Assembly (NCBI RefSeq): GCF_963853765.1 | Contig: NC_088854.1 | Location: forward strand, 13,144,001-13,208,000 | Reading direction: 5' to 3' | Origin: Magallana gigas | Lineage: Eukaryota | DNA length: 64,000 nucleotides | Shown here: one piece after another, positions 30,259 to 58,787 of the stretch | How the letters are laid out: each line of letters opens with the position of its first letter | Numbering within the stretch: position 1 is the stretch's first letter | Made by a program: the position numbers and the translations under genes | Notes under the pieces: model-generated | The model's input: only the letters and a program-made list of their open reading frames with translations | What the model was told of the DNA's origin: nothing | The model's database searches: none

Positions 30259-31776
30259 CTACGGACCGTGTCGAAACGATCTTGCATCGGTTTCGTTACC
30301 GACTTTGGAGAAGGTTTTCTTTTTCCATGTACAGCAATGAATTACCAGGCAAATCATTGAGGTAATGAAAACGCCCCCACCTGCAGCAGCAACCATCATG
30401 TAAATCGTATTTATGGAGAATATACCTTCCACCGTCTTTGATGTCATTTTCAAATTGTTTCCTGTAGATAGTACTGGAGCGATCTTTTTCGCTGGCGTCT
30501 GCTTAACGATGGTAGTTTTTTCGGTGGTTGTAGTCGGAGTGGTGGTCTTGGTTGTAGGAGGAATGGTTTTCCTGGTGGTATTATTGTTTGTTGTGGTTGA
30601 GATAGTACTCATGGTAGTGGTACTGGTTGTGGTGATGGTAGTTGTAGTTGGAACATCAGTCACAATCAATTGCATGTTGACCTTATTCTGCTTTTTTACA
30701 TTGTTAGCCTGAATCGTCCACTGGCCGTTGTCATCAACGTCCAATGACTTTATGGTAAGGACACCTGTCTCAGATACTTCGTAATTTGGATAATCATAGT
30801 TATAATGCCTCAACTCCGTCTTGTCAGGCTTTGTCCATATGACGTCAGGGAAAGGGTCTCCTCCGAATGTACATGAAATATTGAGGCTGGAGTGATACTT
30901 GCCGGTACTTGAAGTTGAAGTGCAACTTACAGATGCCGGTACACAGGTTAGCTGGGAGGATGGGACATTTACAATGGACATGTATTGGAGAGATTCTGGT
31001 GTACTACACGTGACAGATTCCGGTATAGGACTAGGAAGCACTTTTACCCACTCCAAGGCACAGGTGCATTTCCAATCATTGTCATTTAAGTGGATACTAT
31101 TTATGTGAGGTAATGTCATTATTGATGAATTGGAAAGTTCCGTAAAAATGTTTCCGGAAATGTCGATATAAGCCAGATTTGTAGGGGTCTTGGTGAAGCT
31201 CCAGTCCAACTGCTTTAGTTTGTTTCCATGAAGGTCTAAGACCTTCAATATTGGAAGACGGTTTAATAAGCGTTTGTCCAGTTTCTTTAAGCCCATCTCT
31301 GCCAGATATAATTCTGTCAATCTTCCTAAATCGTTGAAAGCAGACAATTGTAATTCAGTGCCATTATTTCCAGACAAATTCAAAACGTTGAGTCTTGTTA
31401 ACCCCTTTAACGTGTTTTGTGCTATTTCGCCAATTTTGTTGAAAGAAAGTTCCAGTGTGATCAACGTTGGTGGCAAAGAGCAGCTTGTTATGGATTCTAC
31501 ATTGCTGAAAGCCATATAAAGTCTCTCCAGTTTCTGGAAGGAATTTAGATGGCTGCTCTCAATCGATGGAATCTGGTTTCGAGAGGAAAAGGTGCCACTG
31601 AGTTGTAATGAAGTGAAATGACTTGGGAAGGCTGACGGAAAGCTGGTTAATCCTGGTCTGCAAATACCAAACACATTGGAGCATTGGCACGATGTTGGAC
31701 AAGAAGATTCAACATTCCCAAAACTCACAACATTAAGTACACATGAAATCGCTGTTATTTTTCTTTTATTTTCCAT
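30259..31776 (-). CDS. LIG2: LRR-Ig-mucin-TM receptor (505 aa) with frameshifted cytoplasmic tail
   Basis: ATG at 31776 (MENKRK...); same domain order as LIG1. An extra base at 30315-30318 relative to LIG3/4 shifts the tail. Confidence 0.88.
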   Translation of the reverse strand: MENKRKITAISCVLNVVSFGNVESSCPTSCQCSNVFGICRPGLTSFPSAFPSHFTSLQLSGTFSSRNQIPSIESSHLNSFQKLERLYMAFSNVESITSCSLPPTLITLELSFNKIGEIAQNTLKGLTRLNVLNLSGNNGTELQLSAFNDLGRLTELYLAEMGLKKLDKRLLNRLPILKVLDLHGNKLKQLDWSFTKTPTNLAYIDISGNIFTELSNSSIMTLPHINSIHLNDNDWKCTCALEWVKVLPSPIPESVTCSTPESLQYMSIVNVPSSQLTCVPASVSCTSTSSTGKYHSSLNISCTFGGDPFPDVIWTKPDKTELRHYNYDYPNYEVSETGVLTIKSLDVDDNGQWTIQANNVKKQNKVNMQLIVTDVPTTTTITTTSTTTMSTISTTTNNNTTRKTIPPTTKTTTPTTTTEKTTIVKQTPAKKIAPVLSTGNNLKMTSKTVEGIFSINTIYMMVAAAGGGVFITSMICLVIHCCTWKKKTFSKVGNETDARSFRHGP

Positions 31777-32429
31777 CTTTGTTAAGAAAAAATTCGAAGG
31801 CTCATTAATTCCCAAATTATGTCAACTGTTTTAACCGGTGCCTTTCACTGAGTGTTGCGGCTTCAGTGTGACGGCATGTCCTGTTAAGGGTTGATATGGG
31901 GAGTGATAATACGGTTCGAGGATTTATTCAAAACATTTGATCACCTGACCAGGACATGTTTAAAAAACAAAAAGCTCATAAATTCATGTAATATGCACAA
32001 GATCACCACAGGTAACGAGACATTTTAGATATTTAACATTTCTATCAATTAAAGGGCATTGATTTAAACACATTTTACTTGCATATGTCAAATGGATTGG
32101 ACACAATTTTCAATATCCTAGTCCTCTACTGGTGATGCATTTAGAAATATAATCAAGTATATAATAAATGATAAATGATATAGTAATATTGTTGTGATAT
32201 ATACATGTAGTATTCAAATTCATATATGTACATTGAATGTTTATTTATGTCTTTTTTTTTTCAAATACAAATAAATAACAAAATAAACACATCCAAATAG
32301 ATATATTTGATGGTTGTTTTATTCTTCCTCATTCTTTTAAAAAATTTACGGCGCTTGTTAACTAAAATTTTGATCAATTTATTGAAATATACACTTATTA
32401 CATGCGTTAATAAGAATAAAACAACCAGT

Positions 32430-37256: not shown

Positions 37257-39732
37257 AATGTTTGCGCCATGTTTCGTTAACAAATAAATTACTCAAAGAT
37301 TCTTTTATATTTTAAACATAATGAATAGCGACTAATCTAGAAATAATTGACACAATCAATAATTATATATTTAATGTGAAACTAAAAGCAATTCAATTTC
37401 ACGCTAGCTTAACATACAATGTAAAACCCGTTGGAAAAATATTCCATTTAGTATTCTAAACAAAATATAATTTTGAATTGCAATTATGCCTATAAATCAG
37501 TAGCATTTTTCTAAACCCATCCACCCCCATCTCATCATCGTAAACATGTTTCAAGAGATAAAAACTCGATATTGTCCCTTTATTGTTGGTTGGTGGATTT
37601 CAAATAAGACAACAGTGCCTGTGGCCAAAGCCCACCATAAAACTGTATATTTTCCAATAATAAGAGATAAACTTATATTCTCGGCTAATTTTTACTGTGC
37701 TATTGATGGTTTATCTCGCGACAACCCCCTCTTCTTAATATTGTGATTTCACACAATAATCAATCTGATTTAGGGAGATTTTATTCCATAATATGACATT
37801 ATCAACATAAATCGATGTAAATCAAACAAACATAAATCGTAATAAATAACAAATCAATATGATACAAACAAACTACAGAAGGATATGTTTGATAAAAGCA
37901 TTAAATAATATATTCAAAAACATTGCGATATGATAAATACTGTTTTAACAAAACAAAGCAACAAGAAATACATGCAGTCTTTGATAGTCGTTAATGACAC
38001 GTTCGTGAATCAAATACCTAGAAAATTGAGAAGTCAAATTGATGTCTGTGTTTGAATCACGAAAAAAATAGCCATAAATTACAAGGTAGTTTTTTTCCCA
38101 TGAGATTCCGTTCTCTTATACTCTACAAAATTTCCCGCTATTCGTAAAATTCATAACTCCCAATAGTATGCACTCTTCGTGTTCGTCTCGGAGTGAGGTT
38201 CCGGACCGTATCGAAAAGGTCTTGCTTCGGTTTCTTTTCCGACATTGGAGGAGGTTTCTTCTTCCGTGTACAGCAATGAATGACCAGACAAATCATGGAG
38301 GTAATAAACGCGCTCCCACCGGCAGCCGCCACCATCATGTAAATCGTATTCATGGAGAACATCCCTTCCGCCGGCTTAGGCATCTTCTGGTTTCCTGCAG
38401 GTGGAACTGGAGTGGTATTTTTAATTGTCGTCTGCTTAACAGTGGTTGTGGTGGTGGGTTTGGTGGTAGATGTTGTAGTAGGTTTTTCAGTGGTAGTGGT
38501 AGGAGTGGTGGTAGTCGTGGTGGTAGGAGGGGTGGTAGTCGTGATGGGGGTACTGGTTGTTGTTGTCGGGGTGGTGGTTGTGGTCGTCGTAGTGGTAGGG
38601 GTAGTGGTAGTAGTGGTGGTGGTAGTCGTTGTAGTGGTGGTTGGAATATCGGTCACGGTCACTTGCATGTTGACCACATTATGTTTCTTCACGTTGTTGG
38701 CCTGAACCGTCCACTGACCGTCGTCATCAACGTCCAATGACTTTATGGTAAGGACACCTGTCTCAGATACTTCGTAATTTGGATAATCATAGTTATAATA
38801 CCTCAACTCCGTCTTGTCAGGCTTTGTCCATATGACGTCAGGGAAAGGGTCTCCTCCGAATGTACATGAAATATTGAGGCTGGAGTGATACTTGCCGGTA
38901 CTTGAAGTTGAAGTGCAACTTACAGATGCCGGTACACAGGTTAGCTGGGAGGATGGGACATTTACAATGGACATGTATTGGAGATATTCTGGTGTACTAC
39001 ACGTCACAGATTCCGGTATAGGACTAGGAAGCACTTTTACCCACTCCAAGGCACAGGTGCATTTCCAATTATTGTCATTTAAGTGGACACTCTTTATGTG
39101 TGGTAATGTCATTATTGATGAATTGGAAAGTTCTGTAAGAATGTTTCCGGAAATGTCGATATAAGCCAGATTTGTAAGTGTCTTAGTGAAGCTCCAGTCC
39201 AACTGCTTTAGTTTGTTTCCATGAAGGTCTAAGACCTTCAATATTGGAAGATTGTCTAATAAGCGCTTGTCCAGTTTCTTTAAGCCCATCTCTGCAAGGT
39301 ATAATTCTGTCAATTTGCTTAAATCGTTGAAAGCAGACAATTGTAATTCAGTGTCATTATTTCCAGACAAATTCAAAACTTTGAGTCTTGTTAACCCCTT
39401 TAACGTGTTTTGTGCTATTTCGCCAATTTTGTTGAAAGAAAGATCCAGCGTGATCAACGTTGGTGGCAATGAAGCGCTTGCTATGGATTCCACATTACTG
39501 AAAGCCATATAAAGTCTCTCCAGTTTCTGGAAGGAATTAAGATTTTTACTTTCAATCGACGGAATCTGGTTTCGAGAGGAAAAGGTACCACTCAGTTGTA
39601 ATGCAGTGAAATGACTTGGGAATCCGGACGGAAAGCTGGTTAATCCTGGTCTGCAAATAGCAGAGACATTGGAACATTGGCACTGTGTTGGACAAGAAGT
39701 TTCAACATTCCCAAAACTCACAACAATAAGTA

Positions 39733-41765
39733 GGCAATCGGTTTTTAGAACGCAGTTCGCAGTTCGCAGTTCGCAATTGAATAGTGAACTGCGTTCTATA
39801 GAACGCAGTTCGCAATTCAAAATTTAGAATTCATATTTGGGGCCCGCTTGCCTTATATGCAATTGAATAGTGAACTGCGTTCTATAGAACGCAGTTCGCA
39901 ATTCAAAATTTAGAATTCATACTTGGGGCCCGCTTGCCTTATATGCAATTGAATAGTGAACTGCGTTCTATAGAACGCAGTTCGCAATTCAAAATTTAGA
40001 ATTCATACTTGGGGCCCGCTTGCCTTATATGCAATTGAATAGTGAACTGCGTTCTATAGAACGCAGTTCGCAATTCAAAATTTAGAATTCATATTTGGGG
40101 CCCGCTTGCCTTATTTGCAATTGAATAGTGCACTGCGTTCTATAGAACGCAGTTCGCAATTCAAAATTTAGAATTCATACTTGGGGCCCGCTTGCCTTAT
40201 ATGCAATTGAATAGTGAACTGCGTTCTATAGAACGCAGTTCGCAATTCAAAATTTAGAATTCATACTTGGGGCCCGCTTGCCTTATTTGCAATTGAATAG
40301 TGAACTGCGTTCTATAGAACGCAGTTCGCAATTCAAAATTTAGAATTCATACTTGGGGCCCGCTTGCCTTATTTGCAATTGAATAGTGAACTGCGTTCTA
40401 TAGAACGCAGTTCGCAATTCAAAATTTAGAATTCATACTTGGGGCCCGCTTTCCTTATATGCAATTGAATAGTGAACTGCGTTCTATAGAACGCAGTTCG
40501 CAATTCAAAATTTAGAATTCATACTCGGGGCCCGCTTTCCTTATATGCAATTGAATAGTGAACTGCGTTCTATAGAACGCAGTTCGCAATTCAAAATTTA
40601 GAATTCATACTTGGGGCCCGCTTGCCTTATATGCAATTGAATAGTGAACTGCGTTCTATAGAACGCAGTTCGCAATTCAAAATTTAGAATTCATATTTGG
40701 GGCCCGCTTGCCTTATATGCAATTGAATAGTGAACTGCGTTCTATCTAGAACGCAGTTCGCAATTCAAATTGTTGAATAGTGAACTGCGTTCTATCTAGA
40801 ACGCAGTTCGCAATTCAAAATTTAGAATTCATACTTGGGGCCCGCTTGCCTTATATGCAATTGAATAGTGAACTGCGTTCTATAGAACGCAGTTCGCAAT
40901 TCAAAATTTAGAATTCATATTTGAGGCCCGCTTGCCTTATTTGCAATTGAATAGTGAACTGCGTTCTATAGAACGCAGTTCGCAATTCAAAATTTAGAAT
41001 TCATACTTGGGGCCCGCTTGCCTTATATGCAATTGAATAGTGAACTGCGTTCTATAGAACGCAGTTCGCAATTCAAAATTTAGAATTCATACTTGGGGCC
41101 CGCTTGCCTTATATGCAATTGAATAGTGAACTGCGTTCTATAGAACGCAGTTCGCAATTCAAAATTTAGAATTCATATTTGGGGCCCGCTTGCCTTATTT
41201 GCAATTGAATGGTGAACTGCGTTCTATAGAACGCAGTTCGCAATTCAAAATTTAGAATTCATACTTGGGGCCCGCTTGCCTTATATGCAATTGAATAGTG
41301 AACTGCGTTCTATAGAACGCAGTTCGCAATTCAAAATTTAGAATTCATACTTGGGGCCCGCTTGCCTTATTTGCAATTGAATAGTGAACTGCGTTCTATA
41401 GAACGCAGTTCGCAATTCAAAATTTAGAATTCATATTTGGGGCCCGCTTGCCTTATTTGCAATTGAATAGTGAACTGCGTTCTATAGAACGCAGTTTGCA
41501 ATTCAAAATTTAGAATTCATACTTGGGGCCCGCTTGCCTTATATGCAATTGAATAGTGAACTGCGTTCTATAGAACGCAGTTCGCAATTCAAAATTTAGA
41601 ATTCATACTTGGGGCCCGCTTGCCTTATATGCAATTGAATAGTGAACTGCGTTCTATAGAACGCAGTTCGCAATTCAAAATTTAGAATTCATACTTGGGG
41701 CCCGCTTGCCTTATATGCAATTGAATAGTTCTAGAACGCAGTTCGCAATTCATTTTTGGGGCCCG
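39733..41765 (+). repeat. Left arm: tandem array of an 86-bp unit (about 23 copies)
   Basis: ggcccg recurs at 39841, 39927 and onward (period 86). The unit contains the 26-bp palindrome gaactgcgttctatagaacgcagttc plus EcoRI, ApaI and MfeI sites. Confidence 0.97.
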
Positions 41766-41929
41766 AAATTTTCAGGGGCATCTACTAGTGGTATTTCACT
41801 ACCACTGTGAAATTTGGTGATGCAGTAATCTATAGTTTTTGAGATCTGTATGGTGTCCGGATAGGGCCATTTGCATTAGCGCGACATCGCGTTCAGATAA
41901 ACGAGACATTGCGCTAACACATGTACACA

Positions 41930-42051
41930 ACACACCGTCGCGCTAACGCAACTTTGCACAACACGCCGTCGCGCTAACACAACTTTGCACAACACGCCGT
42001 CGCGCTAACACAACTTTGCTTAACACGCCGTCGCGCTAACGCAACTTTGCA
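41930..42051 (+). repeat. 31-bp minisatellite (4 copies) in the central loop of the foldback element
   Basis: cgctaac recurs at 41941, 41972, 42003 and 42034. Confidence 0.9.
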
Positions 42052-42229
42052 AGTTTCACAGTCTAGTAGGAAGTCGTGTCCGGAAATATTAGACTGCGCA
42101 TGCTGAAATATGCATGCACGCAAGCATGGATAAAAAATAAATAAAATGTACTTTGAAATATATATATTATTTTCATTTATTATCAGTGCATATGAATAAA
42201 GATATAGTTACTAGTGTGTCACTAGATAA

Positions 42230-42412
42230 GGATATGAATTTCGTGGATCATTGTTTAGTTGATCCACGAAATTAAATATTCATTGAAGTGCAATTTTAAT
42301 TAACATTTTGTATTGATAGGTTCATTGGCCACTAATTTACGTATACTTGATATTGTGATTTTCACTTTATCCACGAAAATTGATGCCCTTGAATATCAAT
42401 GAAACTACAGTA
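42230..42412. mobile_element. Small MITE-like relic with internal hairpin
   Basis: Perfect 14-bp arms aatttcgtggatca / tgatccacgaaatt (42237-42273). The end aatgaaactacagta resembles a recalled common mollusc MITE terminus. Confidence 0.4.
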
Positions 42413-42744
42413 TTCAATTGCATATAAGCTCGATTCTCAGAAACTATAGATAACTGCATCACCATATTTTCACTGTGGTAGTGAAATACCACTAGTAGAT
42501 GCCCCTGAAAAATTCAGGTCCCGAATATGAATTCTAAATTTTGATTTGCAAATTGCTTTCTAAATAGAACGCAGTTCACTATTCAATTGCATATAAGTCC
42601 GATTCTTAAACATAGGTAATAACAGATTACAAAGCTCACCGAGACGAGGGATCACCTTTTTGAGGAATCACCTTTATGAGACCACCTTTATCATATTATT
42701 TGAAAATCATAGTTAATGATCTTGGATATACATGGATACTGTTT

Positions 42745-43700
42745 TGACAAAATATCGTATAACAATATCATATAAATAAAAATTGTATAATAATCATATG
42801 TTCATTTCATAGGGTATTATATGATACAATGTTTATCAATACGATAATATAAAATACTATATTGCATCCTATGATACCAGTACAATATATATCATATATT
42901 ACAATAAAATATATACTGTAATAAATAATGATGAAATATGATATTGTAACATATGATATGACATTGTATCTTGTTATACATTATTGTATTTGATCACATA
43001 ATACACTATCATAATATATTATGATATTGATATGATATGATACATTATAATAATATATGATACAATATCATATCACATAATGCATCACAATATTATACTG
43101 TATAATATTATAGCATGATATTGCATTGTATGATATTGTATCATATTTAATACAATGTAGGATATTGTATCATATGATACAACAAAATTAGCTACAACAT
43201 TGTATCATATCAATTGATACAATATCATGTGATATAGTACTATATTATATCATACAATATCATAGTATACTTTATTGTATGATATGATACAATATCACAT
43301 TATACAATATCATATAATACATTTTCATATATTGATATAATTATATATTATATAAACCAATCTCATTTTATACAATATCGTATCATATGATATGATATAT
43401 ATTATACAATATCATATCATATGATACTATATTATGATGCAATATCATATGAAATAGCATGTGATAAAATATAATATATGTCATATTATACAATATCATA
43501 TTATACAATATTGTATCATAATAAACAATACTATACATAACAATATCACAATACAATATCATATCTTATGTACAAAAAAAATTGATACAATATCATATCG
43601 TATCATATAACTTTTTACAATATAATATATGATATAATATTGTATCATATAAAACAATAGTGTATCATATCATACAATACTATATCATAGGAATCATATT
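42745..43700. repeat. AT-rich degenerate (atatc/gatat-type) low-complexity tract
   Basis: About 950 bp of imperfect tacaatatcatatcatatgat-like motifs inside the HINE-like element. Confidence 0.85.
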
Positions 43701-43859
43701 ATATCATTTAACAACGAACACATCTATCAAGCAGGTTTTAGATAGGATAATTTTTTTTAGCAACTTTGATAATGGAGATCTGCATCTGAAGCTACCTCTG
43801 CAGTTCATTAATATTATAGTTAAATCAACTTTGCAAGCTATTATCTATAAAATTTGTGA

Positions 43860-44915
43860 CCTGTTCCAAAAAAACAAATCTCATCCAGCATCCGAAACAT
43901 ACGCCTCAGATTCAGCATTCAAGCCTGCCAGGTGCATCAGTATCATAAGACGTATCATCCATGCAAGTTTTATGAAGTTGGGACCAGTAATAACTAAGAT
44001 ATAATCATCAGAGGGCACCTGCTCCAAAAACTTTAACAAACTCTTAAAACCTTAACCTCCTTCAGCATCCGAAACCTATGGCTCAGATTCAGCATTCATG
44101 CCTGTCAGGTGCATCAGTATTATAAGACGCACCATCCATATAAGTTTGGTGAAGTTAAGACCAGTGATAACTAAGTTATAATCATCAAAGGGCACCTGCT
44201 CCAAAACTTTAACCAGCTCTAAAAACCTTAACCTCATCCAGCATCCGAAACTTATGGCTCAGATTCGGCATTCCTTCCTGTCAGAGGCATCAGTATCATA
44301 CGACACACCATCTATGCAAGTTTGGTGAAGTTAGGACCAGTAATAACTAAGATATAATCATCAAAGGGCACCTGCTCCAAAAACTTTAACCAGCTCTTAA
44401 AACCTTAACCTCATCCATCATCTGAAACCTATGGCCCAGATTCAGCATTCAAGCCTGCCAGGTATATCAGTATCATAAGACGCACCATCTATGCAAATTT
44501 AGTGAAGTTAGGACCAGTAATACCTAAGATATAATCATCAAAGGGCACCTGCTCCAAAAACGTTAACCAGCTCTAAAAACCTTAACCTCATCCAGCATCT
44601 GAAACCTAAGGCTCAGATTCAGCATTAAAGCATGTCTGATGCATCAGTATCATAAGATGCACCATCCATGCAAGTTTGGTAAAGTTAGGACCAGTAGTAA
44701 CCTATAAATTGCTATCAAAGGGCACCTGCACCAAAAACTCTAACTTGCTCCAAAAACCTTAACCTCCTCCAGCATCTGAAACTCATGGCCCTGATTCAGC
44801 ATTCAGGTCTTTCAAGTCCATGAGTAGGTCAAGATGCATCATCCATGCAAGTTTGGTGAAGATAGGACAAGTAATAACTTAGATACAGGACCTGCAACAA
44901 AAACTTTAACCAGGT
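43860..44915 (+). repeat. 177-bp tandem repeat (about 6 copies)
   Basis: agcatc(c/t)gaaac anchors at 43887, 44064, 44240, 44417, 44594 and 44771. Confidence 0.93.
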
Positions 44916-44983
44916 TCGGACGCCGACGCCGAGGGTATAGCATAAGCTCCCCCCGACTTCGTTTCGGTGAGCTAAAAACTACC

Positions 44984-47157
44984 CAAATATGAATTCTAAA
45001 TTTGAATTGCAAACTGCGTTCTAGATAGAACGCAGTTCACTATTCAATTGCATATAAGGCAAGCGGGCCTCAAATATGAATTCTAAATTTTGAATTGCGA
45101 ACTGCGTTCTAGATAGAACGCAGTTCACTATTCAATTGCATATAAGGAAAGCGGGCCTCAAATATGAATTCTAAATTTTGAATTGCGAACTGCGTTCTAG
45201 ATAGAACGCAGTTCACTATTTAATCGCACTAAATTTTGAATTGCGAACTGCGTTCTATAGAACGCAGTTCACTATTCAATTGCATATAAGGAAAGCGGGC
45301 CTCAAATATGAATTCTAAATTTTGAATTGCGAACTGCGTTCTAGATAGAACGCAGTTCACTATTTAATCGCACTAAATTTTGAATTGCGAAGGGCGTTCT
45401 ATAGAACGCAGTTCACTATTCAATTGCATATAAGGCAAGCGGGCCCCAAGTATGAATTCTAAATTTTGAATTGCGAACTGCGTTCTATAGAACGCAGTTC
45501 ACTATTCAATTGCATATAAGGCAAGCGGGCCCCAAGTATGAATTCTAAATTTTGAATTGCGATCTGCGTTCTATAGAACGCAGTTCACTATTCAATTGCA
45601 TAGAAGGCAAGCGGGCCCCAAATATGAATTCTAAATTTTGAATTGCGAACTGCGTTCTATAGAACGCAGTTCACTATTCAATTGCATATAAGGCAAGCGG
45701 GCCCCAAATATGAATTCTAAATTTTGAATTGCGAACTGCGTTCTATAGAACGCAGTTCACTATTCAATTGCATATAAGGAAAGCGGGCCCCAAGTATGAA
45801 TTCTAAATTTTGAATTGCGAACTGCGTTCTATAGAACGCAGTTCACTATTCAATTGCATATAAGGCAAGCGGGCCCCAAGTATGAATTCTAAATTTTGAA
45901 TTGCGATCTGCGTTCTATAGAACGCAGTTCACTATTCAATTGCATAGAAGGCAAGTGGGCCCCAAATATGAATTCTAAATTTTGAATTGCGAACTGCGTT
46001 CTATAGAACGCAGTTCACTATTCAATTGCATATAAGGCAAGCGGGCCCCAAATATGAATTCTAAATTTTGAATTGCGAACTGCGTTCTATAGAACGCAGT
46101 TCACTATTCAATTGCATATAAGGAAAGCGGGCCCCAAGTATGAATTCTAAATTTTGAATTGCGAACTGCGTTCTATAGAACGCAGTTCACTATTCAATTG
46201 CATATAAGGCAAGCGGGCCCCAAATATGAATTCTAAATTTTGAATTGCGAACTGCGTTCTATAGAACGCAGTTCACTATTCAATTGCATATAAGGCAAGC
46301 GGGCCCCAAGTATGAATTCTAAATTTTGAATTGCGAACTGCGTTCTATAGAACGCAGTTCACTATTCAATTGCATATAAGGCAAGCGGGCCCCAAGTATG
46401 AATTCTAAATTTTGAATTGCGAACTGCGTTCTATAGAACGCAGTTCACTATTCAATTGCATATAAGGCAAGCGGGCCCCAAATATGAATTCTAAATTTTG
46501 AATTGCGAACTGCGTTCTATAGAACGCAGTTCACTATTCAATTGCATATAAGGCAAGCGGGCCCCAAATATGAATTCTAAATTTTGAATTGCGAACTGCG
46601 TTCTATAGAACGCAGTTCACTATTCAATTGCATATAAGGCAAGCGGGCCCCAAATATGAATTCTAAATTTTGAATTGCGAACTGCGTTCTATAGAACGCA
46701 GTTCACTATTCAATTGCATATAAGGCAAGCGGGCCCCAAATATGAATTCTAAATTTTGAATTGCGAACTGCGTTCTATAGAACGCAGTTCACTATTCAAT
46801 TGCATATAAGGCAAGCGGGCCCCAAATATGAATTCTAAATTTTGAATTGCGAACTGCGTTCTATAGAACGCAGTTCACTATTCAATTGCATATAAGGCAA
46901 GCGGGCCCCAAATATGAATTCTAAATTTTGAATTGCGAACTGCGTTCTATAGAACGCAGTTCACTATTCAATTGCATATAAGGCAAGCGGGCCCCAAATA
47001 TGAATTCTAAATTTTGAATTGCGAACTGCGTTCTATAGAACGCAGTTCACTATTCAATCGCACTAAATTTTGAATTGCGAACTGCGTTCTATAGAACGCA
47101 GTTCACTATTCAATTGCGAACTGCGAACTGCGAACTGCGTTCTAAAAACCGATTGCC
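44984..47157 (-). repeat. Right arm: inverted tandem array of the 86-bp unit (about 25 copies)
   Basis: Reverse complement of the left-arm unit, with some deletion-variant units at about 45215, 45355 and 47045. Confidence 0.97.
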
Positions 47158-49384
47158 CAATAAGTACACATGAAATCGCTGTTATTTTTCTTTTATTTAC
47201 CATCTTTGTAAAAACAAAATTTGGAAGGCTCCTTAATTTTAAATTATGGCAACTGTTTTAACCGGTGCCTTTCACTTAGTGTTGCGGCTTCAGTGTCACA
47301 GCATGTCCTGCTAAGGGTTGATATGGGGAGTGATATTACGTTTCGAGGATTTATTCAAAACATTTGATCACCTGACCAGGACATGTTTAAAAAACAAACA
47401 ATTATTAGTGTACCCAATCGCCATTTATTTATGCAATCAATCGACTGCTTCCGTGTTTGGTTAAAATCTACTAAAAATCTACTAAATTTGAGTTTACAAG
47501 TGTAAGGGGAAATGTACCCTCTTATCTTTTTATTACTTTATATTCTTACTATGCAATCTCATTTGCAGCTGCAAGTTCTAAATAACAAGATGTTGTTTTA
47601 GCTGACGTTTAAAGGCAAATCGAGAACGTACGTACACGCAATAAGTTTAAACTTATTTTTTGTTTTTAAATGATGTTCTCCTTGCATTCTGAGTTTGGTT
47701 TGACTGCACTTTTCAAGCTCAAATTTTAGGAAATTTTCCTATGATTTCATTTGAAATAAAATTTTCGGTTATAAGTATGACGAAAATTTAATTGTGTTTT
47801 ATTAAGTATGATGCAACTTGAATTATACCCTTGTGTTTTCATTTCTGGAAAATATTGTCATTTGACGCGTTCGGTTCTGAAATTCTGAATTTGCTATGGA
47901 CGTGAATTCTCAGTTTTACGTGCATATGTTAACATAGACATGATAATAAATTTATTCAAGTAAATTACAGAATGTAAGATATGAGACCATGTTAAAATAA
48001 ACGAGTCCTTACACATGTTGATGGATAGCATTGGAATTGTGTTTTAATGTTTTATACAGAGTTGTATGTTCATACAGGGCATGTTGAAAAGAAAAATATG
48101 AATCCCCCCTTTCGTAAATAACTTATAATTAGCATATTTAGGGATTTGCTAGAGTAAAACACGATATCAGTTAGTGAAATCAATCTTTCTAGAAGAGGTC
48201 TTTTAAAGAAATAGATTCCAGAGTCATTTCTTTACATAGGAAAGAAAATATGTGGTCAACAGACATACAAATCAATGGAGCATGGTATTTAGTAACTATC
48301 TATTTAAAGAAACATAGAATATAAATAAGTCTAGCTGTGTCTGAGTCACGAACTGGATATGAATTTATCAAACTTTATTTTACTTTATCTTTGTGTTTAC
48401 AACTTGCAATGCTTAGCAAGGTATTACTACTATATTGTAATATTATTAACATTAATTAGAATGTTGTTCGTTGAGTTGCCAAACTAATAATTCTTTATTA
48501 TGGTATAAATGCTCGCGCCATGTCTTGTTAACAAATAAATTACTCAAAGATTCTTTTATATTTGAATAGCGACAAACACAAAACTAATGGGCACAATTAA
48601 TTATTATATATTTATGTGAAACTAAAAGCAATTCAATTTCACGCTAGGTTACATGTAGCTTAGCATACAACGTAAAATCCGTTGGAAATATATTCCATTT
48701 AGTATTTGAAACAAAATATAATTTGAAATTGCAATTATGCCCATAAATCAGTAGCATTTTTCTAAACCCATCCACCCCAATCTCATCATCGTTAACATGT
48801 TTCAAGAGATAAAACTCGAGATTGTCCCTTTATTGTTGGTTGGTGGATTTCAAATAAGACAACAGTGTCTGTGGCCAAAGCCAACATAAAACTGTATATT
48901 TTCCAATAATAAGAGATAAACTTATATTCTCGGCTAATTTTACTGTGCTATGGATGGTTTATCTCGCGACAACCCCCTCTTCTTAATATTGTAATTTCAC
49001 ACAATTATCAATCTGATTTAGGGAGATTTTATTCCATAATATGACATTATCAACATAAATCGATGTAAATCAAACAAACATAAATCGTAATAAATAACAA
49101 ATCAATATGATACAAACAAACTACAGAAGGATATTTTTGATAAAAGCATTAAATAATATATTCAAAAACATTGCGATAGGATTAATACTGTTTAAATAAA
49201 ACAAAGCAACAAGAAATACATGCAGTCTTTGATAGTCGTTAATGACACGTTCGTGAATCAAATACCTAGAAAATTATAAAGTCAAATTGATGTCTGTGTT
49301 TGAATCACGAAAAAAATAGCCATTAATTACAAGGTAGTTTTTTCCCATGAGATTCCGTTCTCTTATTCTCTACAAAATTGCCTG

Positions 49385-51025
49385 CTATTCGTAATGTTCA
49401 TAACTCCCAATATTATGCACTCTTCGTGTCCGTCTCGGAGTGAGGTTCCGGACCGTATCGAAAAGGTCTTGCTTCGGTTTCTTTTCCGACATTGGAGGAG
49501 GTTTCTTCTTCCGTGTACAGCAATGAATGACCAGACAAATCATGGAGGTAATAAACGCGCTCCCACCGGCAGCCGCCACCATCATGTAAATCGTATTCAT
49601 GGAGAACATTCCTTCCGCCGGCTTAGGCGTCGTCTGGTTTCCTGCAGGTGGAACTGGAGTGGTATTTTTAGCTGTCGTCTGCTTAACAGTGGTTGTGGTG
49701 GTGGGTTTGGCGGTAGATGTTGTAGTAGGTTTTTCAGTGGTAGTGGTAGGAGTAGTGGTAGGAGGGGTGGTGGTTGTGGTGGTAGGAGGGGTGGTAGTCG
49801 TGGTGGGGGTACTGGTTGTTGTCGGGGTGGTGGTTGTGGTCGTCGTAGTGGTAGGGGTAGTGGTAGTAGTGGTGGTGGTAGTCGTTGTAGTGGTGGTTGG
49901 AATATCGGTCACGGTCACTTGCATGTTGACCACATTCTGTTTCTTCACGTTGTTGGCCTGAACCGTCCACTGGCCGTCGTCATCAACGTCCAATGACTTT
50001 ATGGTAAGAACACCTGTCTCAGATACTTCGTAATTTGGATTATCATAGTTATAGTACTTCAACTCCGTCCCATCAGGCTTTGTCCAAATGACTTCCGGAA
50101 ATGGGTCTCCTCCAAATGTACACGAAATTTTGAGGCTGGTGTGATATTTGCCGGTACTTGAAGTTGAAGAACAACTTACAGATGCCGGTACACAGGTTAG
50201 CTGGGAGGAAGGGACATTTACAATGGACATGTATTGGAGGGTTTCTGGTGTACTACACGTGACAGATTCCGGTACTGGACTAGGAAGCACTTTTACCCAC
50301 TCCAAGGCACAGGTGCATTTCCAATCGTTGTCATTTAAGTGGATACTCTTTATGTGTGGTAATGGCATTATTGATGAATTGGAAAGTTCCGTAAAAATGT
50401 TTCCGGAAATGTCGATATAAGCCAGATTTGTAAGTGTCTTGGTGAAGCTCCAGTCTAATTGCTTGAGTTTGTTTCCATGAAGGTCTAACACCTTCAACAT
50501 TGGAAGATGGTCTAATAAGCGCTTGTCCAGTTTCTTTAAGCCCATCTCTGCAAGATATAATTCTGTTAATTTGCTTAAATCGTTGAAAGCAGACAATTGT
50601 AATTCAGTGCCATTATTTCCAGACAAATTCAAAACTTTGAGTCTTGTTAACCCCTTTAACGTGTTTTGTGCTATTTCGCCAATTTTGTTGAAAGAAAGAT
50701 CCAGCGTGATCAACGTTGGTGGCAAAGAAGCGCTTGCTATGGATTCTACATTGCTGAAAGCCATGTAAAGTCTCTCCAGTTTCTGGAAGGAATTTAGATG
50801 GCTGCTCTCAATCGACGGAATCTGGTTTCGAGAGGAAAAGGTACCACTCAGTTGTAATGCAGTGAAATGACTTGGCAATCCAGACGGAAAGCTGGTTAAT
50901 CCTGGTCTGCAAATAGCAGAGACATTGGAACATTGGCACTGTGTTGGACAAGAAGTTTCAACCTTCCCAAAACTCACAACAATAAGTACACATGAAATCA
51001 CTATGGCACATTTACTTTCCAGCAT
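49385..51025 (-). CDS. LIG4: intact LRR-Ig-mucin-TM receptor (546 aa)
   Basis: ATG at 51025 (MLESKCAIVIS...), full domain set, tail ending IGSYEHYE. Near-identical to LIG3 in TM, tail and 3' flank. Confidence 0.92.
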   Translation of the reverse strand: MLESKCAIVISCVLIVVSFGKVETSCPTQCQCSNVSAICRPGLTSFPSGLPSHFTALQLSGTFSSRNQIPSIESSHLNSFQKLERLYMAFSNVESIASASLPPTLITLDLSFNKIGEIAQNTLKGLTRLKVLNLSGNNGTELQLSAFNDLSKLTELYLAEMGLKKLDKRLLDHLPMLKVLDLHGNKLKQLDWSFTKTLTNLAYIDISGNIFTELSNSSIMPLPHIKSIHLNDNDWKCTCALEWVKVLPSPVPESVTCSTPETLQYMSIVNVPSSQLTCVPASVSCSSTSSTGKYHTSLKISCTFGGDPFPEVIWTKPDGTELKYYNYDNPNYEVSETGVLTIKSLDVDDDGQWTVQANNVKKQNVVNMQVTVTDIPTTTTTTTTTTTTTTPTTTTTTTTTPTTTSTPTTTTTPPTTTTTTPPTTTPTTTTEKPTTTSTAKPTTTTTVKQTTAKNTTPVPPAGNQTTPKPAEGMFSMNTIYMMVAAAGGSAFITSMICLVIHCCTRKKKPPPMSEKKPKQDLFDTVRNLTPRRTRRVHNIGSYEHYE

Positions 51026-57182: not shown

Positions 57183-58787
57183 TCAGAATTCGGATAGTGT
57201 TTCAATAATGGTGAAAGCGTTTGTGTTTCGTTCCGCTTTTCGGAAGTCGTAACTTGGTTTTCTCCCCACTCTGTTCTTCTTGACTGGCCCCGAGTAAGGC
57301 TGCCCCGGCGGTTTTTTACAAAACGCAAAGTACATGATAGCAATACAGATCGAGGTAATAAGCAGCGAACTGCCTCCGACTATGGTCAAAATAACGCCGA
57401 TCTTTTCCAGATCGTCTTTAGGTTTGGACGGTGTTTTAGACGCGTTGTTGGTAGTCGTACTTTTTGTTGGAGTTGTGGTTGTGGTGGTTTTTATTGTTTT
57501 TGTTGTGGTCGGTTGTGGTGTCGTGGTCGTAGTGGTGGTGGTCGTAGGAGTTGTTGTAGGAGTTGTCGTAGTGGTCGTGGAAGCGGTCGTAGTGGTGGTA
57601 GTCGGAGTGGTAGTGGTTGTCGTGCTAGTGGTCGTTGTGGTTGTGGTGGTAGTGGTGATGATTCTTACCTCGATATGAACCACCACTTTGATATCATTTC
57701 CGTGTGTGTTCGTGACCGTCAGAGTCCAGTCGCCGGAATCACTCTCGACAGACGATGGAATCAACAGACTTCCGTCCGTGAGCACGATGTGGGAGGAATT
57801 CGTCGAGTTCTTTACTAAAAGTTCTTCACCGCTCGGTTTGTTCCATATAGGATAGGGCCGTGGATCTCCGCCGTTGAATCGACAGTTTACGCGTATTGGT
57901 TCCGTTTCATTCACGATGATCGAAGTCCTTTCGCATGTTGCGTTGTACGGTGGGATACACAGCATTTCGCTGTCTGGGATGAGCATAAGGTTTCTATTTT
58001 CCAGCTTTTTCGGCGAATCACAAATAACAACCCCTTTAATGTTTGTCCATTTCTTTAATGCATTCATTTCACAATTACAATGCCACGCATTTCCGTCTGT
58101 GTACAGGCTTTTCAGAGTGACCATTTGCTGATACGTAAAGGAGGGAAGAGCTATCAACCGGTTTCCCACCAAATCAAGGCTCATCAACGATGCAAAATTC
58201 TCGAAAACTTCGGGTTCGAATTCGACCAGTTCGTTTCCATGTAAATCTAAATGTACAATCTTCCTTGTATTGTAAAATAAATATGGCTGAAGATTACTTA
58301 ACTTCATTTGCCCAAGAAATAGTTCGAATAGATTTGGAACATGTTGAAAGGCATTTTCCTCAATCACGCAATTCTCATTGCTTGTTAGTTCGAGTTTCGT
58401 CAATTTCGTCAATCCTCGGAATGTAGCCTCTTTTACTGAGCTAAGCTGGTTGTCAGACAGATCAAGTGTTCGTAAATTAGAGAGGCTTTCAAAAGCACCG
58501 TCCTCGATTGATTCGATTCCAGAATTGGCTAGATACAGGCGCTGTAATATCGGAAAATTTGCAAAGTCACTCTTCCTTATCCTTGTGAAAGAATTTTTCT
58601 GTGCAGATGTTCCGGAGAAATAAAGGTTTTTCACGGTAGAGGGAATTCCCGAGGGTATGGCTGACAGCCCACCGAAACATTGTACAAGCGAGTCCCCAAA
58701 CAAACACCGACAGTCAGACGGGCAGCCAGCAGAAATCTCAAATAACACAACACAGCCACAAAAAATGGCAACAATTCCCCGCTCCAT
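57183..58787 (-). CDS. LIG5: divergent LRR-Ig-mucin-TM receptor (534 aa)
   Basis: ATG at 58787 (MERGIVAIF...). CPSDCRC LRRNT, the same number of LRRs and the same atypical repeats as LIG1-4, WHCNC LRRCT, Ig, Thr stalk and TM. Confidence 0.92.
   Translation of the reverse strand: MERGIVAIFCGCVVLFEISAGCPSDCRCLFGDSLVQCFGGLSAIPSGIPSTVKNLYFSGTSAQKNSFTRIRKSDFANFPILQRLYLANSGIESIEDGAFESLSNLRTLDLSDNQLSSVKEATFRGLTKLTKLELTSNENCVIEENAFQHVPNLFELFLGQMKLSNLQPYLFYNTRKIVHLDLHGNELVEFEPEVFENFASLMSLDLVGNRLIALPSFTYQQMVTLKSLYTDGNAWHCNCEMNALKKWTNIKGVVICDSPKKLENRNLMLIPDSEMLCIPPYNATCERTSIIVNETEPIRVNCRFNGGDPRPYPIWNKPSGEELLVKNSTNSSHIVLTDGSLLIPSSVESDSGDWTLTVTNTHGNDIKVVVHIEVRIITTTTTTTTTTSTTTTTTPTTTTTTASTTTTTTPTTTPTTTTTTTTTPQPTTTKTIKTTTTTTPTKSTTTNNASKTPSKPKDDLEKIGVILTIVGGSSLLITSICIAIMYFAFCKKPPGQPYSGPVKKNRVGRKPSYDFRKAERNTNAFTIIETLSEF

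What the first reader, a model, noticed from the sequence alone, without database searches (positions are those of the whole stretch)
39724..47166. 7.4-kb Foldback/MULE-like transposon whose ~2-kb TIRs are satellite arrays of an 86-bp unit
Seen: exact terminal inversion starting GGCAATCGG, exact 9-bp TSD, about 23 units on the left and about 25 inverted units on the right. A unique inner inverted block (about 41770-41844 / 42435-42510) marks the true TIR inner ends around a loop of about 590 bp. There is no transposase. Known: 9-bp TSDs and long, internally repetitive TIRs characterise Drosophila FB and Mutator-type (e.g. Phantom) elements. Inference: a recently active non-autonomous family that spreads a satellite by transposition; it may be uncatalogued.
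Basis: partly seen in the sequence, partly recalled or inferred. Interest (0 to 1): 0.8.

Follow-up and report, generated by a model that had tools for sequence, protein, structure and literature searches.

The report
Oyster foldback transposon carrying satellite arrays
This is a real, recently mobile, transposase-less "foldback" DNA transposon of an oyster: its two arms are arrays of a published oyster satellite (CgiSat25), it carries a second mobile element inside, and this copy sits in the coding sequence of a receptor-like gene. It is a new example of a known kind of element, not a new kind.

Summary
The element spans window 39733-47157 (7,425 bp) and is flanked by an exact 9-bp duplication, CAATAAGTA. 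Its ends are exact inverted copies for 95 bp. The arms hold 23 (left) and 26 (right) tandem units, mostly 86 bp.

It belongs to a family of about 100 copies (204 termini) in a 564-Mb oyster genome. Copies range from 0.5 to 12.3 kb, and 20 of 25 checked have exact 9-bp duplications. Removing the element in silico restores a 543-aa LRR-Ig receptor-like ORF. Public oyster runs suggest the insertion is still segregating.

- The 86/88-bp unit is already published as satellite CgiSat25 of Crassostrea gigas.
- The "unique inner block" is one copy of a 169-bp long unit, which forms whole arrays in other family members.
- About 2.4 kb of the interior (about 42607-44979) is a nested Helentron non-autonomous element carrying satellite CgiSat37. 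Most copies share it, so it moves with the element.

No transposase was found in any copy. The Mutator/Phantom assignment rests only on the 9-bp duplication and the foldback architecture. I found no description of the transposon itself in the literature I could search; Repbase and Dfam could not be queried. Verdict: a new member of a known kind, of moderate interest.

The parts
39724..39732 (.). Left target-site duplication, CAATAAGTA
   Evidence: identical 9-mer at 47158-47166. Removing one copy plus the element restores the host ORF.
39733..39776 (+). Left terminus: tip GGCAATCGGTTTTTAGAACGCAGTTCG followed by 7-bp CAGTTCG repeats
   Evidence: TRF finds a 7-bp repeat at 39751-39775. The 28-mer has 204 genomic hits against 0 for the control.
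39777..41729 (+). Left arm: 23 tandem units, mostly 86 bp (CgiSat25). Each unit carries a perfect 26-bp palindrome that repeats the terminal motif on both strands.
   Evidence: Identity to the published CgiSat25 monomer.
41730..41844 (+). Left inner block: the extra segment of one 169-bp 'long unit'
   Evidence: Inverted match to 42435-42533. The same segment is tandemly arrayed with period 168-169 bp in other copies.
41845..42412 (.). Central loop of 568 bp, non-coding, containing a 31-bp x 4.6 tandem repeat at 41911-42051
   Evidence: In 15 other copies (L046 is a variant with only a partial match) it is 93-100% identical (97-100% in 14 of them) and sits in the same position.
42413..42597 (-). 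Right inner long unit (inverted) plus one degenerate 86-bp unit: the innermost part of the right arm
42607..44979 (+). Nested Helentron non-autonomous element (Cg_HINE CL7 / Helitron-N12_CGi type). It comprises a left flank with sub-TIR (42633-47) and a 16-bp microsatellite-like repeat, an AT-rich variable segment, a CgiSat37 array and a right flank with sub-TIR (44959-73).
   Evidence: Independent genomic copies match only from query position 9-11 of the left flank and only up to position 93-96 of the right flank, with about 1,500 first-look candidates each. Sub-TIR pair. Literature.
43880..44885 (+). 177-bp x 5.7 tandem array = satellite CgiSat37
   Evidence: TRF. The published CgiSat37 monomer contains the same sequence.
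44980..47113 (-). Right arm: 26 tandem units (19x86, 3x88, 3x56 bp spacings), inverted relative to the left arm
47114..47157 (-). Right terminus, an exact inverted copy of the left terminus
47158..47166 (.). Right target-site duplication, CAATAAGTA
38138..39732 (-). Host gene, distal part (codon ~13 to stop): a single-exon protein with LRR, Ig (I-set), a Thr-rich stalk and a TM segment, cut by the insertion
47158..47203 (-). Host gene, first ~15 codons (MVNKRKITAISCVLI), separated from the rest by the element

Best explanation
Window 39733-47157 is one copy of a non-autonomous, foldback-type class II (cut-and-paste) transposon family of an oyster, most likely Crassostrea/Magallana gigas or a very close relative.

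Shown:
- The termini are defined and lie in inverted orientation, and insertion makes 9-bp target duplications.
- The arms are arrays of satellite CgiSat25 units. Array ends are inherited from copy to copy, while unit number changes quickly.
- A Helentron HINE carrying satellite CgiSat37 inserted into the inner right arm of an ancestor. It has since been copied along with the element.
- This copy landed in the signal-peptide codons of an LRR-Ig receptor-like gene.

Suggested by public data:
- The insertion appears to be still segregating in oyster populations.

Inferred:
- A transposase supplied in trans binds the motif TAGAACGCAGTTC. That motif sits at the tip and twice per unit, as a 26-bp palindrome, giving roughly 50 sites per arm.
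- The transposase cuts at the GG ends and integrates with a 9-bp stagger.
- It is most likely a Mutator-like (Phantom-type, FLYWCH + MULE) enzyme. I put that at about 0.55. The foldback-transposon reading itself I put at about 0.95.
For: - Termini and TSD read directly.
- 204 termini in the genome against 0 for the control; 129 are exact, forming 42 exact-exact pairs 0.5-12.3 kb apart.
- Of 25 elements checked, 20 have exact 9-bp TSDs, 1 matches 8/9, 1 matches 7/9 and 3 have none.
- Copies of 543 and 562 bp are loop-less foldbacks that flip at a unit palindrome.
- 16 of 22 full copies share the order inner block - 568-bp loop - inner block - HINE, mostly 97-100% identical.
- Arm 'barcodes' share tip and inner-end units, while the 86-bp unit count varies from 7 to 55.
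- Excision in silico restores a 543-aa ORF, 506/547 identical to the neighbouring paralog.
- Contigs from 3 of 4 unrelated runs stop matching exactly at 39732 and run on for 317-1,094 nt. Junction-spanning 31-mers occur in 13 runs from 7 studies.
- The genome holds 81 MULE-domain hits, and at least 9 loci have FLYWCH directly upstream of MULE.
- From the literature: 9-bp TSDs with tandem-repeat TIRs characterise the Phantom/MULE-linked foldback element Tm1 (PMC3169594). Tetris has 8-10-bp TSDs with tandem-repeat TIRs and was tentatively assigned to Mutator on that basis (PMC4079207). MULE TSDs are 8-11 bp (PMC6446971).
Against: - No copy encodes a transposase. The only long ORF in any fetched copy is a nested LINE.
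- No PF10551 or PF04500 hit lies inside or next to any terminus pair.
- The terminal 16-mer is almost confined to this family. Only 3 exact non-family hits were found, and one of those is a family end with a mutated terminus. No autonomous element with these ends was seen.
- Merlin elements also make 8-9-bp TSDs (from my own knowledge). Foldback architecture has also arisen in the P superfamily, as in Galileo (PMC3688188).
- Transposase binding to the repeated motif is untested.
- Empty-site alleles are inferred from where contigs stop matching. I could not see the letters beyond the break.
Confidence: 0.85

Rival explanations
1. The same foldback element, but mobilised by a DDE transposase from another superfamily (Merlin with 8-9-bp TSDs, a P/THAP type as for Galileo, or an unclassified one) rather than a MULE/Phantom enzyme.
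For: No MULE or FLYWCH hit is associated with any family copy. Foldback architecture is known to evolve independently in different superfamilies, for example Galileo in the P superfamily (PMC3688188; discussion in PMC4079207).
Against: The TSD is strictly 9 bp in 20 of 25 copies. P/Galileo make 7-8 bp and hAT 8 bp (my own knowledge). Published foldback families with 9-bp TSDs (FB, Tm1, Tetris) are placed in or near Mutator.
Confidence: 0.3
2. The family is extinct. The copies and this insertion are old, and nothing moves any more.
For: No autonomous copy is present in this assembly. Three of 25 copies lack TSDs and 75 of 204 termini carry 1-2 mismatches. The junction words occur in runs labelled as two different organisms, so this insertion is not brand new.
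Against: 129 termini are exact and 20 of 25 TSDs are exact. The central regions are mostly 97-100% identical. The interrupted host ORF is otherwise fully open. The insertion appears polymorphic.
Confidence: 0.3
3. The composite is moved by the rolling-circle machinery of the internal Helentron element rather than by cut-and-paste at the foldback termini.
For: A HINE with sub-TIRs and a CgiSat37 array lies inside. Helitron-type elements are the dominant satellite carriers in oysters (PMC7492417, PMC8268682).
Against: Helitrons make no TSD (PMC7492417), whereas copies here have 9-bp TSDs exactly at the foldback termini. Copies without any HINE (543 and 562 bp) have the same ends and also carry flanking duplications (9/9 and 7/9). 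Independent HINE copies end at ~42607 and ~44979, not at the element ends.
Confidence: 0.02
4. An assembly artefact, or a local inverted duplication of a satellite island, and not a transposon.
For: Long near-identical inverted arrays are hard to assemble.
Against: About 100 copies lie at unrelated loci, each with its own 9-bp TSD. The left junction words are found in 13 independent runs. Precise excision restores an ORF.
Confidence: 0.01

Closest known systems
Drosophila Foldback (FB) elements, including FB-NOF
   Same: Long TIRs built of tandem repeats whose unit complexity grows inward. Here the series is a 7-bp repeat at the tip, then 56, 86/88 and 169-bp units. Arm length is highly variable, some copies have no loop, TSDs are 9 bp, and most copies are non-coding. 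The FB features are from my own knowledge and from the papers.
   Different: No sequence relationship was tested. The units are much longer (86-169 bp against 10-31 bp), and each contains a 26-bp perfect palindrome. No NOF-like coding copy with these termini was found. The host is a bivalve.
Tm1 of root-knot nematodes (Mutator/Foldback, Phantom-type transposase; PMC3169594)
   Same: Composite TIRs of variable length made of tandem repeats, 9-bp TSDs without a target consensus, and mostly non-coding or MITE-like copies.
   Different: Tm1 has an identified Phantom-type autonomous member, while none was found here. Tm1 repeats are 13-15 bp.
Tetris of Drosophila virilis (PMC4079207)
   Same: A non-autonomous foldback element whose TIRs contain ~220-bp tandem repeats that also count as a satellite. 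TSDs are 8-10 bp, no autonomous partner was found, and it was assigned to Mutator only by TSD length.
   Different: Tetris has only three complete copies, and its repeat also forms kilobase-scale standalone arrays. Here there are about 100 copies, and the unit hits I could inspect were all inside elements.
CgiSat25 satellite of Crassostrea gigas (Tunjic-Cvitanic et al. 2021, PMC8268682)
   Same: The published 88-bp monomer is the arm unit. It is collinear with the 86-bp consensus apart from a 2-bp GA indel in the palindrome loop. The 88-bp spacing also occurs in the window. The satellite was reported on all 10 chromosomes with about 2,500-3,000 monomers.
   Different: The paper lists it only as a satellite with a fragmentary 'NonLTR/R1' Repbase similarity. 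It does not describe it as the TIR of a transposon.
Cg_HINE (CL7) / Helitron-N12_CGi with CgiSat37 (PMC7492417, PMC8268682)
   Same: The internal segment ~42607-44979 has the HINE layout: a left flank with sub-TIR and a microsatellite-like repeat, a variable spacer, a 177-bp array and a ~95-bp right flank with sub-TIR.
   Different: This HINE copy is a passenger inside another transposon and is replicated by that element's transposition.
Galileo (P superfamily foldback-like element)
   Same: Long, internally repetitive TIRs with multiple transposase-binding sites (PMC3688188). This serves as a functional analogy for the repeated motif here.
   Different: Galileo encodes a THAP/P-type transposase and makes 7-bp TSDs (my own knowledge). 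Here the TSD is 9 bp.

Membership tests
Foldback-type (FB-like) transposons (structural class) | Long terminal inverted repeats composed of tandem repeats | tested here: met
   arms of ~2.0 and ~2.2 kb with 23 and 26 units; the ends are exact inverted copies for 95 bp.
Foldback-type (FB-like) transposons (structural class) | Arm length and loop vary between copies, and some copies have no loop | tested here: met
   copies range from 543 bp to 12.3 kb, arms from 0.7 to 5.1 kb, and the 543- and 562-bp copies fold back at a unit palindrome.
Foldback-type (FB-like) transposons (structural class) | Defined termini with target-site duplications at many unrelated loci | tested here: met
   204 termini; 20 of 25 elements have exact 9-bp TSDs.
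Mutator / MULE superfamily (Phantom group) | TSD of 8-11 bp, typically 9 | tested here: met
   9 bp in 20 of 25 copies. The expected range is from PMC6446971.
Mutator / MULE superfamily (Phantom group) | An autonomous member with the same termini that encodes a MULE-domain DDE transposase (with FLYWCH in Phantom) | tested here: inconclusive
   None of 81 PF10551 hits or 20 PF04500 hits lies within or beside a terminus pair. The 22 full copies fetched are non-coding apart from a nested LINE. One assembly was searched, and flanks of the MULE loci could not be fetched.
Mutator / MULE superfamily (Phantom group) | Similarity of termini to a known MULE/Phantom element | not testable with these tools
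   No Repbase or Dfam access.
CgiSat25 satellite DNA | Sequence identity of the repeat unit to the published monomer | tested here: met
   By eye, the published 88-bp monomer is collinear with the TRF consensus except for a 2-bp indel. 88-bp spacings are present in both arms.
Helentron non-autonomous element (Cg_HINE, CL7 / Helitron-N12_CGi) | Central array of the family's own satellite (CgiSat37, 177-178 bp) | tested here: met
Helentron non-autonomous element (Cg_HINE, CL7 / Helitron-N12_CGi) | Left and right flanks with complementary sub-terminal inverted repeats, and independent copies sharing the same ends | tested here: met
   Sub-TIR at 42633-47 / 44959-73. Copies outside the family match only from ~42606-08 and only up to ~44978-81.
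Helentron non-autonomous element (Cg_HINE, CL7 / Helitron-N12_CGi) | 3' palindrome and insertion without a TSD | not tested
   I did not examine the 3' hairpin or the target dinucleotide in detail.

The most novel reading that the evidence does not exclude
A foldback family still transposes in oysters although no element in the genome carries its termini together with a transposase. On this reading it is driven by an enzyme with unrelated ends: a Phantom-type gene, a domesticated host gene or an unknown transposase that recognises the 26-bp palindrome. The family also repeatedly picks up Helentron HINEs. Two subfamilies carry CL7-type HINEs at different positions, so the family acts as a shuttle for two satellites and a second dispersal route for oyster satellite DNA beside Helitrons.
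Probability: 0.15. Interest if true: 0.65.

Novelty: new member of a known kind. Interest (0 to 1): 0.42.

Why it matters
- It explains the scattered, all-chromosome distribution of a published oyster satellite. CgiSat25 is the arm repeat of a mobile foldback element, and every unit hit I could inspect lay inside family copies.
- Oyster satellite dispersal has so far been attributed mainly to Helitron/Helentron elements. This adds a cut-and-paste foldback vehicle.
- It shows one element (a HINE with CgiSat37) being amplified as a passenger of another.
- I found no foldback transposon family described for bivalves in the literature I could search.
- This copy interrupts the coding sequence of an LRR-Ig receptor-like gene in a tandem paralog cluster and appears polymorphic. 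It is therefore a candidate natural knockout allele.
- Long inverted arrays of this kind are known elsewhere to promote rearrangements.

Tried and rejected
- **Autonomous partner.** I looked for coding capacity in the longest copies. The 4.8 kb of extra sequence in the 12.3-kb copy is a nested LINE with a 1,250-aa APE/RT ORF and a poly-A tail. The 9.5-kb copy is fully covered by this element's own sequence. The novel 1.4 kb of subfamily 2 has no convincing ORF.
- **Transposase domains.** MULE (PF10551) and FLYWCH (PF04500) hits were cross-checked against all listed termini, and none is co-located.
- **Other elements with the same tip.** A search for elements sharing only the terminal 16-mer found essentially only this family.
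- **Metagenome scan.** A scan of JGI metagenome contigs for the terminus found nothing.
- **Fetching more copies.** Mid-size copies (2-6 kb) and the flanks of the MULE loci therefore remain unseen.
- **Private nested insertion.** I first thought 42600-44985 was an insertion private to this copy. That is rejected, because it is shared collinearly by most copies. It is nested, but ancestral to the subfamily.
- **Other internal repeats.** The 169-bp long unit and the 31-bp loop repeat are not in the published C. gigas satellitome file.
- **Earlier scan note.** Note s1-366436 reports an FB/NOF-like element 432 kb upstream. No MULE or FLYWCH hit lies at that position, and I could not read its sequence.
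Full report

Yes. Reading both ends shows the 9-mer CAATAAGTA at 39724-39732 and again at 47158-47166. The element proper (39733-47157, 7,425 bp) begins GGCAATCGGTTTTTAGAACGCAGTTCG at both ends in inverted orientation. The two ends are exact inverted copies for 95 bp.

Tandem Repeats Finder reports 86-bp arrays at 39773-41729 and 45373-47062 with 97-98% matches. Hundreds of long inverted pairs link the two arms. Counting unit starts gives 23 on the left (spacings 20x86, 1x50, 1x88) and 26 on the right (19x86, 3x56, 3x88), plus one inner unit.

The inner inverted block is 41747-41844 / 42435-42533, 91% complementary, with 590 nt between its inner ends. Only two ORFs of 60 aa or more overlap the element. 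The 114-aa ORF has no Pfam hit above threshold and the element has no Rfam hit.

The terminal 28-mer occurs twice in the window against none in 100 shuffles.

**2. It is a transposon family, not a local oddity.**

The window is contig C2:13,144,001-13,208,000 of a 564-Mb, 29-contig genome. The terminal 28-mer has 204 hits at up to 2 mismatches (98 forward, 106 reverse), against 0 for the reversed control. Of these, 129 are exact. By my count they form 42 plus/minus pairs, 0.5-12.3 kb apart, spread over all ten large contigs.

For 25 elements whose two flanks I could read, the result was:
- 20 have an exact 9-bp duplication, different at every locus.
- One matches 8/9 and one matches 7/9.
- Three have none.

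The duplicated 9-mers are AT-rich with no obvious consensus.

The smallest copies (543 and 562 bp) are pure foldbacks with no loop. The left arm turns into the right arm at the palindrome inside one unit.

**3. The strongest single proof of transposition is in the window itself.**

The element sits in a gene. Four single-exon paralogs lie on the minus strand at 30259-31815, 38138-..., 49385-51025 and 57183-58961. The one at 49385-51025 has LRR_8 and I-set/Ig_3 Pfam domains. These are followed by a Thr-rich stretch and a hydrophobic segment.

The second paralog is split. Its first ~15 codons (MVNKRKITAISCVLI) lie right of the element, at 47203-47158. The rest lies left of it, from 39732 downwards. 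Removing the element and one TSD copy in a script restores one uninterrupted 543-aa ORF. That ORF is 506/547 identical to the neighbouring paralog. The insertion is therefore exonic, in the signal-peptide codons. The rest of the ORF has not decayed, which argues that the insertion is young.

**4. Organism and population data.**

Public runs that hold the left flank include several labelled 'oyster metagenome'. The repeat units match published Crassostrea gigas satellites (section 5). The host is therefore an oyster of the C. gigas group. I did not see a species name.

I laid the contigs of four unrelated runs on 38900-40000. In three of them (X1, X19, X20), contigs stop matching exactly at 39732, the last TSD base. 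They then continue for 317-1,094 further letters that do not match the element. One 150-nt contig in X1 matches the flank with no differences and then has 26 non-matching letters (table 8). This is what an empty site looks like, but I could not see the continuing letters, so it remains an inference.

Conversely, 31-mers spanning the flank/terminus junction (39703-39762) occur in 13 runs from 7 studies. These runs carry two coded organism labels and 'oyster/mollusc metagenome'. Other runs of the same studies show none (only 2 sampled words, so absence is weak). Taken together, the insertion looks like a segregating polymorphism.

**5. What the parts are.**

(a) *The arm unit is a known satellite.* The supplement of the C. 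gigas satellitome paper (PMC8268682) lists CgiSat25 as an 88-bp monomer. It is collinear with the 86-bp consensus except for a 2-bp indel in the centre of the palindrome (CTAGATAG against CTATAG). The 88-bp form is also present in both arms.

The paper reports CgiSat25 on all ten chromosomes, with about 2,500-3,000 monomers and only a fragmentary 'NonLTR/R1' Repbase similarity. In the library I could search, no other paper mentions it.

A 35-mer from the unit core has 1,300 genomic hits. The first 100 listed (C1 and the first 12.3 Mb of C2) all lie inside family copies. CgiSat25 therefore appears to be essentially the TIR repeat of this family.

(b) *Each unit contains a perfect 26-bp palindrome* (GAACTGCGTTCTATAGAACGCAGTTC; 43 matches at up to 3 mismatches in the window). 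Its half-site repeats the sub-terminal motif TAGAACGCAGTTC found at the element tip. Each arm therefore carries roughly 50 copies of the terminal motif.

(c) *The 'unique' inner block is not unique.* In other family members (L003/L004, L007-L012, L027/L028) the arms are arrays of a 168-169-bp unit. That unit is the 86/88-bp unit plus this very block.

The arms are thus hierarchical. A 7-bp repeat sits at the tip, followed inward by 56-bp, 86/88-bp (or 144-bp = 56+88) and 169-bp units. Different copies use different mixes.

(d) *About 2.4 kb of the interior is a nested Helentron non-autonomous element.* The 177-bp array at 43880-44885 is CgiSat37. The satellitome paper ties CgiSat37 to Repbase Helitron-N12_CGi and to cluster CL7 of the Cg_HINE elements.

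I searched the genome with the putative left flank (42598-42720) and right flank (44886-44985). Each gave about 1,500 first-look candidates. Copies outside the foldback family match only from query position 9-11 of the left flank and only up to position 93-96 of the right flank. This places the HINE ends at about 42607 and 44979.

The two flanks carry a complementary 15-nt sub-TIR (42633-47 / 44959-73). The layout is left flank with a microsatellite-like 16-mer, an AT-rich spacer, the array and a ~95-bp right flank. This matches the published HINE description.

On both sides the HINE is bordered by CgiSat25-unit sequence. On its left are the first 9 nt of the long-unit block, so it entered (or replaced most of) a second long unit at the inner end of the right arm.

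(e) *The composite moves as one piece.* Sixteen of 22 full-length copies, including this one, have the same order: inner block, 568-bp loop, inner block, HINE left flank ... right flank. Segment identities are mostly 97-100%, and the copy at C2:12.30 Mb is 99.3% identical over 3.3 kb.

A second subfamily (5 copies) lacks the loop and has a CL7-type HINE right flank abutting the inner block instead. A third has long-unit arms. The HINE-less mini copies share the same termini and also carry flanking duplications (9/9 and 7/9).

(f) *Arrays are inherited but unstable.* Coding each arm by unit length shows conserved tip and inner-end units across copies. The tip is usually a 56-bp unit. The inner end reads '...56-88-88' on the right and '50-88-88-88-88' on the left. 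Meanwhile the number of 86-bp units varies from 7 to 55.

This copy and its closest relative share an unusual left arm: no 56-bp tip unit, and 'about ten 86-mers + 50 + 88' modules. So the arrays travel with the element and then expand or contract, presumably by unequal exchange or replication slippage (inferred).

**6. The transposase.**

None was found. The longest copy (12.3 kb) owes its size to a nested LINE. The 9.5-kb and 9.9-kb copies are simply long arrays. None of 81 MULE-domain hits or 20 FLYWCH hits lies within or next to a terminus pair.

The terminal 16-mer is almost exclusive to the family. Three exact hits continue differently, and one of those is a family end.

The genome does contain Phantom-type architecture, with FLYWCH 0.4-0.7 kb upstream of MULE on the same strand, at nine or more loci. 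Examples are C1:36.53 Mb and three tandem copies at C3:4.62-4.65 Mb.

An earlier, unchecked scan note (s1-366436) reports an FB/NOF-like element 432 kb upstream of the window. Neither Pfam search hits that position, and I could not inspect it.

**7. Mechanism.**

Shown:
- Defined inverted termini.
- 9-bp duplications.
- Restoration of a host ORF on excision.
- About 100 dispersed copies.
- Inheritance of the arrays and of the nested HINE.

Inferred:
- A DDE transposase supplied in trans binds the repeated motif, cuts at the GG ends and integrates with a 9-bp stagger.
- The many motif copies per arm act as extra binding sites, as shown for Galileo's long TIRs (PMC3688188).
- The superfamily is most likely Mutator/Phantom. 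Strictly 9-bp TSDs plus tandem-repeat foldback TIRs are the signature of FB, Tm1 (PMC3169594) and Tetris (PMC4079207). MULE TSDs are 8-11 bp (PMC6446971).

I give the MULE assignment about 0.55. Another DDE superfamily (Merlin with 8-9 bp, or an unclassified one) gets about 0.3. Rolling-circle movement by the internal HINE is excluded by the TSDs and by the HINE-less copies. An assembly artefact is excluded by the independent junction reads and by the many loci.

**8. Novelty and score.**

The satellite (CgiSat25) and the internal HINE/CgiSat37 are published. Foldback elements with satellite-like TIRs and 9-bp TSDs are a known kind.

What seems undescribed, in the literature I could search, is the following:
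- CgiSat25 is the arm repeat of a mobile foldback family in an oyster.
- The family carries a Helentron HINE as a passenger.
- This copy is a probable natural knockout of a receptor-like gene.

Repbase and Dfam could not be checked. The 2021 Repbase screen of CgiSat25 returned only a fragmentary R1 hit, which suggests no entry contained the array at that time.

I rate it a new member of a known kind, interest about 0.4.

Noticed in passing
window 30259-31815, 38138-39732 (+47158-47203), 49385-51025, 57183-58961 (all minus strand): A tandem cluster of four single-exon paralogs encoding a signal peptide, LRR, Ig (I-set), a Thr-rich mucin-like stalk and a TM segment. The second paralog is the one interrupted by the element.
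   Followed up: partly
G000 C2:4,546,033-4,634,565 (loci L007-L012): Six same-strand solo termini spaced 11.6-24 kb apart. Five of them have near-identical flanks (four identical, one differing at one base). A truncated family copy appears to have been amplified as part of a tandem segmental duplication.
   Followed up: no
L031+L032 (G000 C4:2748164-2760414), element positions ~3958-8740: A non-LTR retrotransposon with an open 1,250-aa endonuclease/reverse-transcriptase ORF and a poly-A tail is nested in the AT-rich spacer of this family copy.
   Followed up: partly
G000 C1:36527876-36528718; C3:4624595-4646259 (three copies); C2:44568662-44569501; C7:37042150-37043054; C9:15670846-15671656; C10:32709747-32710525; C4:5660937-5661638: A FLYWCH domain lies 0.4-0.7 kb upstream of a MULE domain on the same strand. 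This is Phantom-type transposase architecture, and some loci have open frames of 400-500 aa. They are candidate trans-acting sources for foldback families.
   Followed up: no
G000 C3:55619015 (+) and C3:55663497 (-): Two exact family termini face each other 44 kb apart, with family interior only near the left one. This could be two truncated copies or a foldback-mediated rearrangement.
   Followed up: no
L035, L037, L038, L039, L043 (subfamily 2): These copies lack the 568-bp loop. They have about 1.4 kb of unrelated non-coding sequence and a CL7-type HINE whose right flank abuts the inner block. This suggests a second, independent HINE acquisition or an internal rearrangement.
   Followed up: partly
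window 41911-42051: A 31-bp x 4.6 tandem repeat lies in the central loop. It is not in the published C. gigas satellitome file.
   Followed up: partly
L003/L004, L027/L028, L037: Three terminus pairs have no matching 9-bp duplication. Two of them have long-unit (169-bp) arms. They may be products of recombination between different insertions.
   Followed up: no
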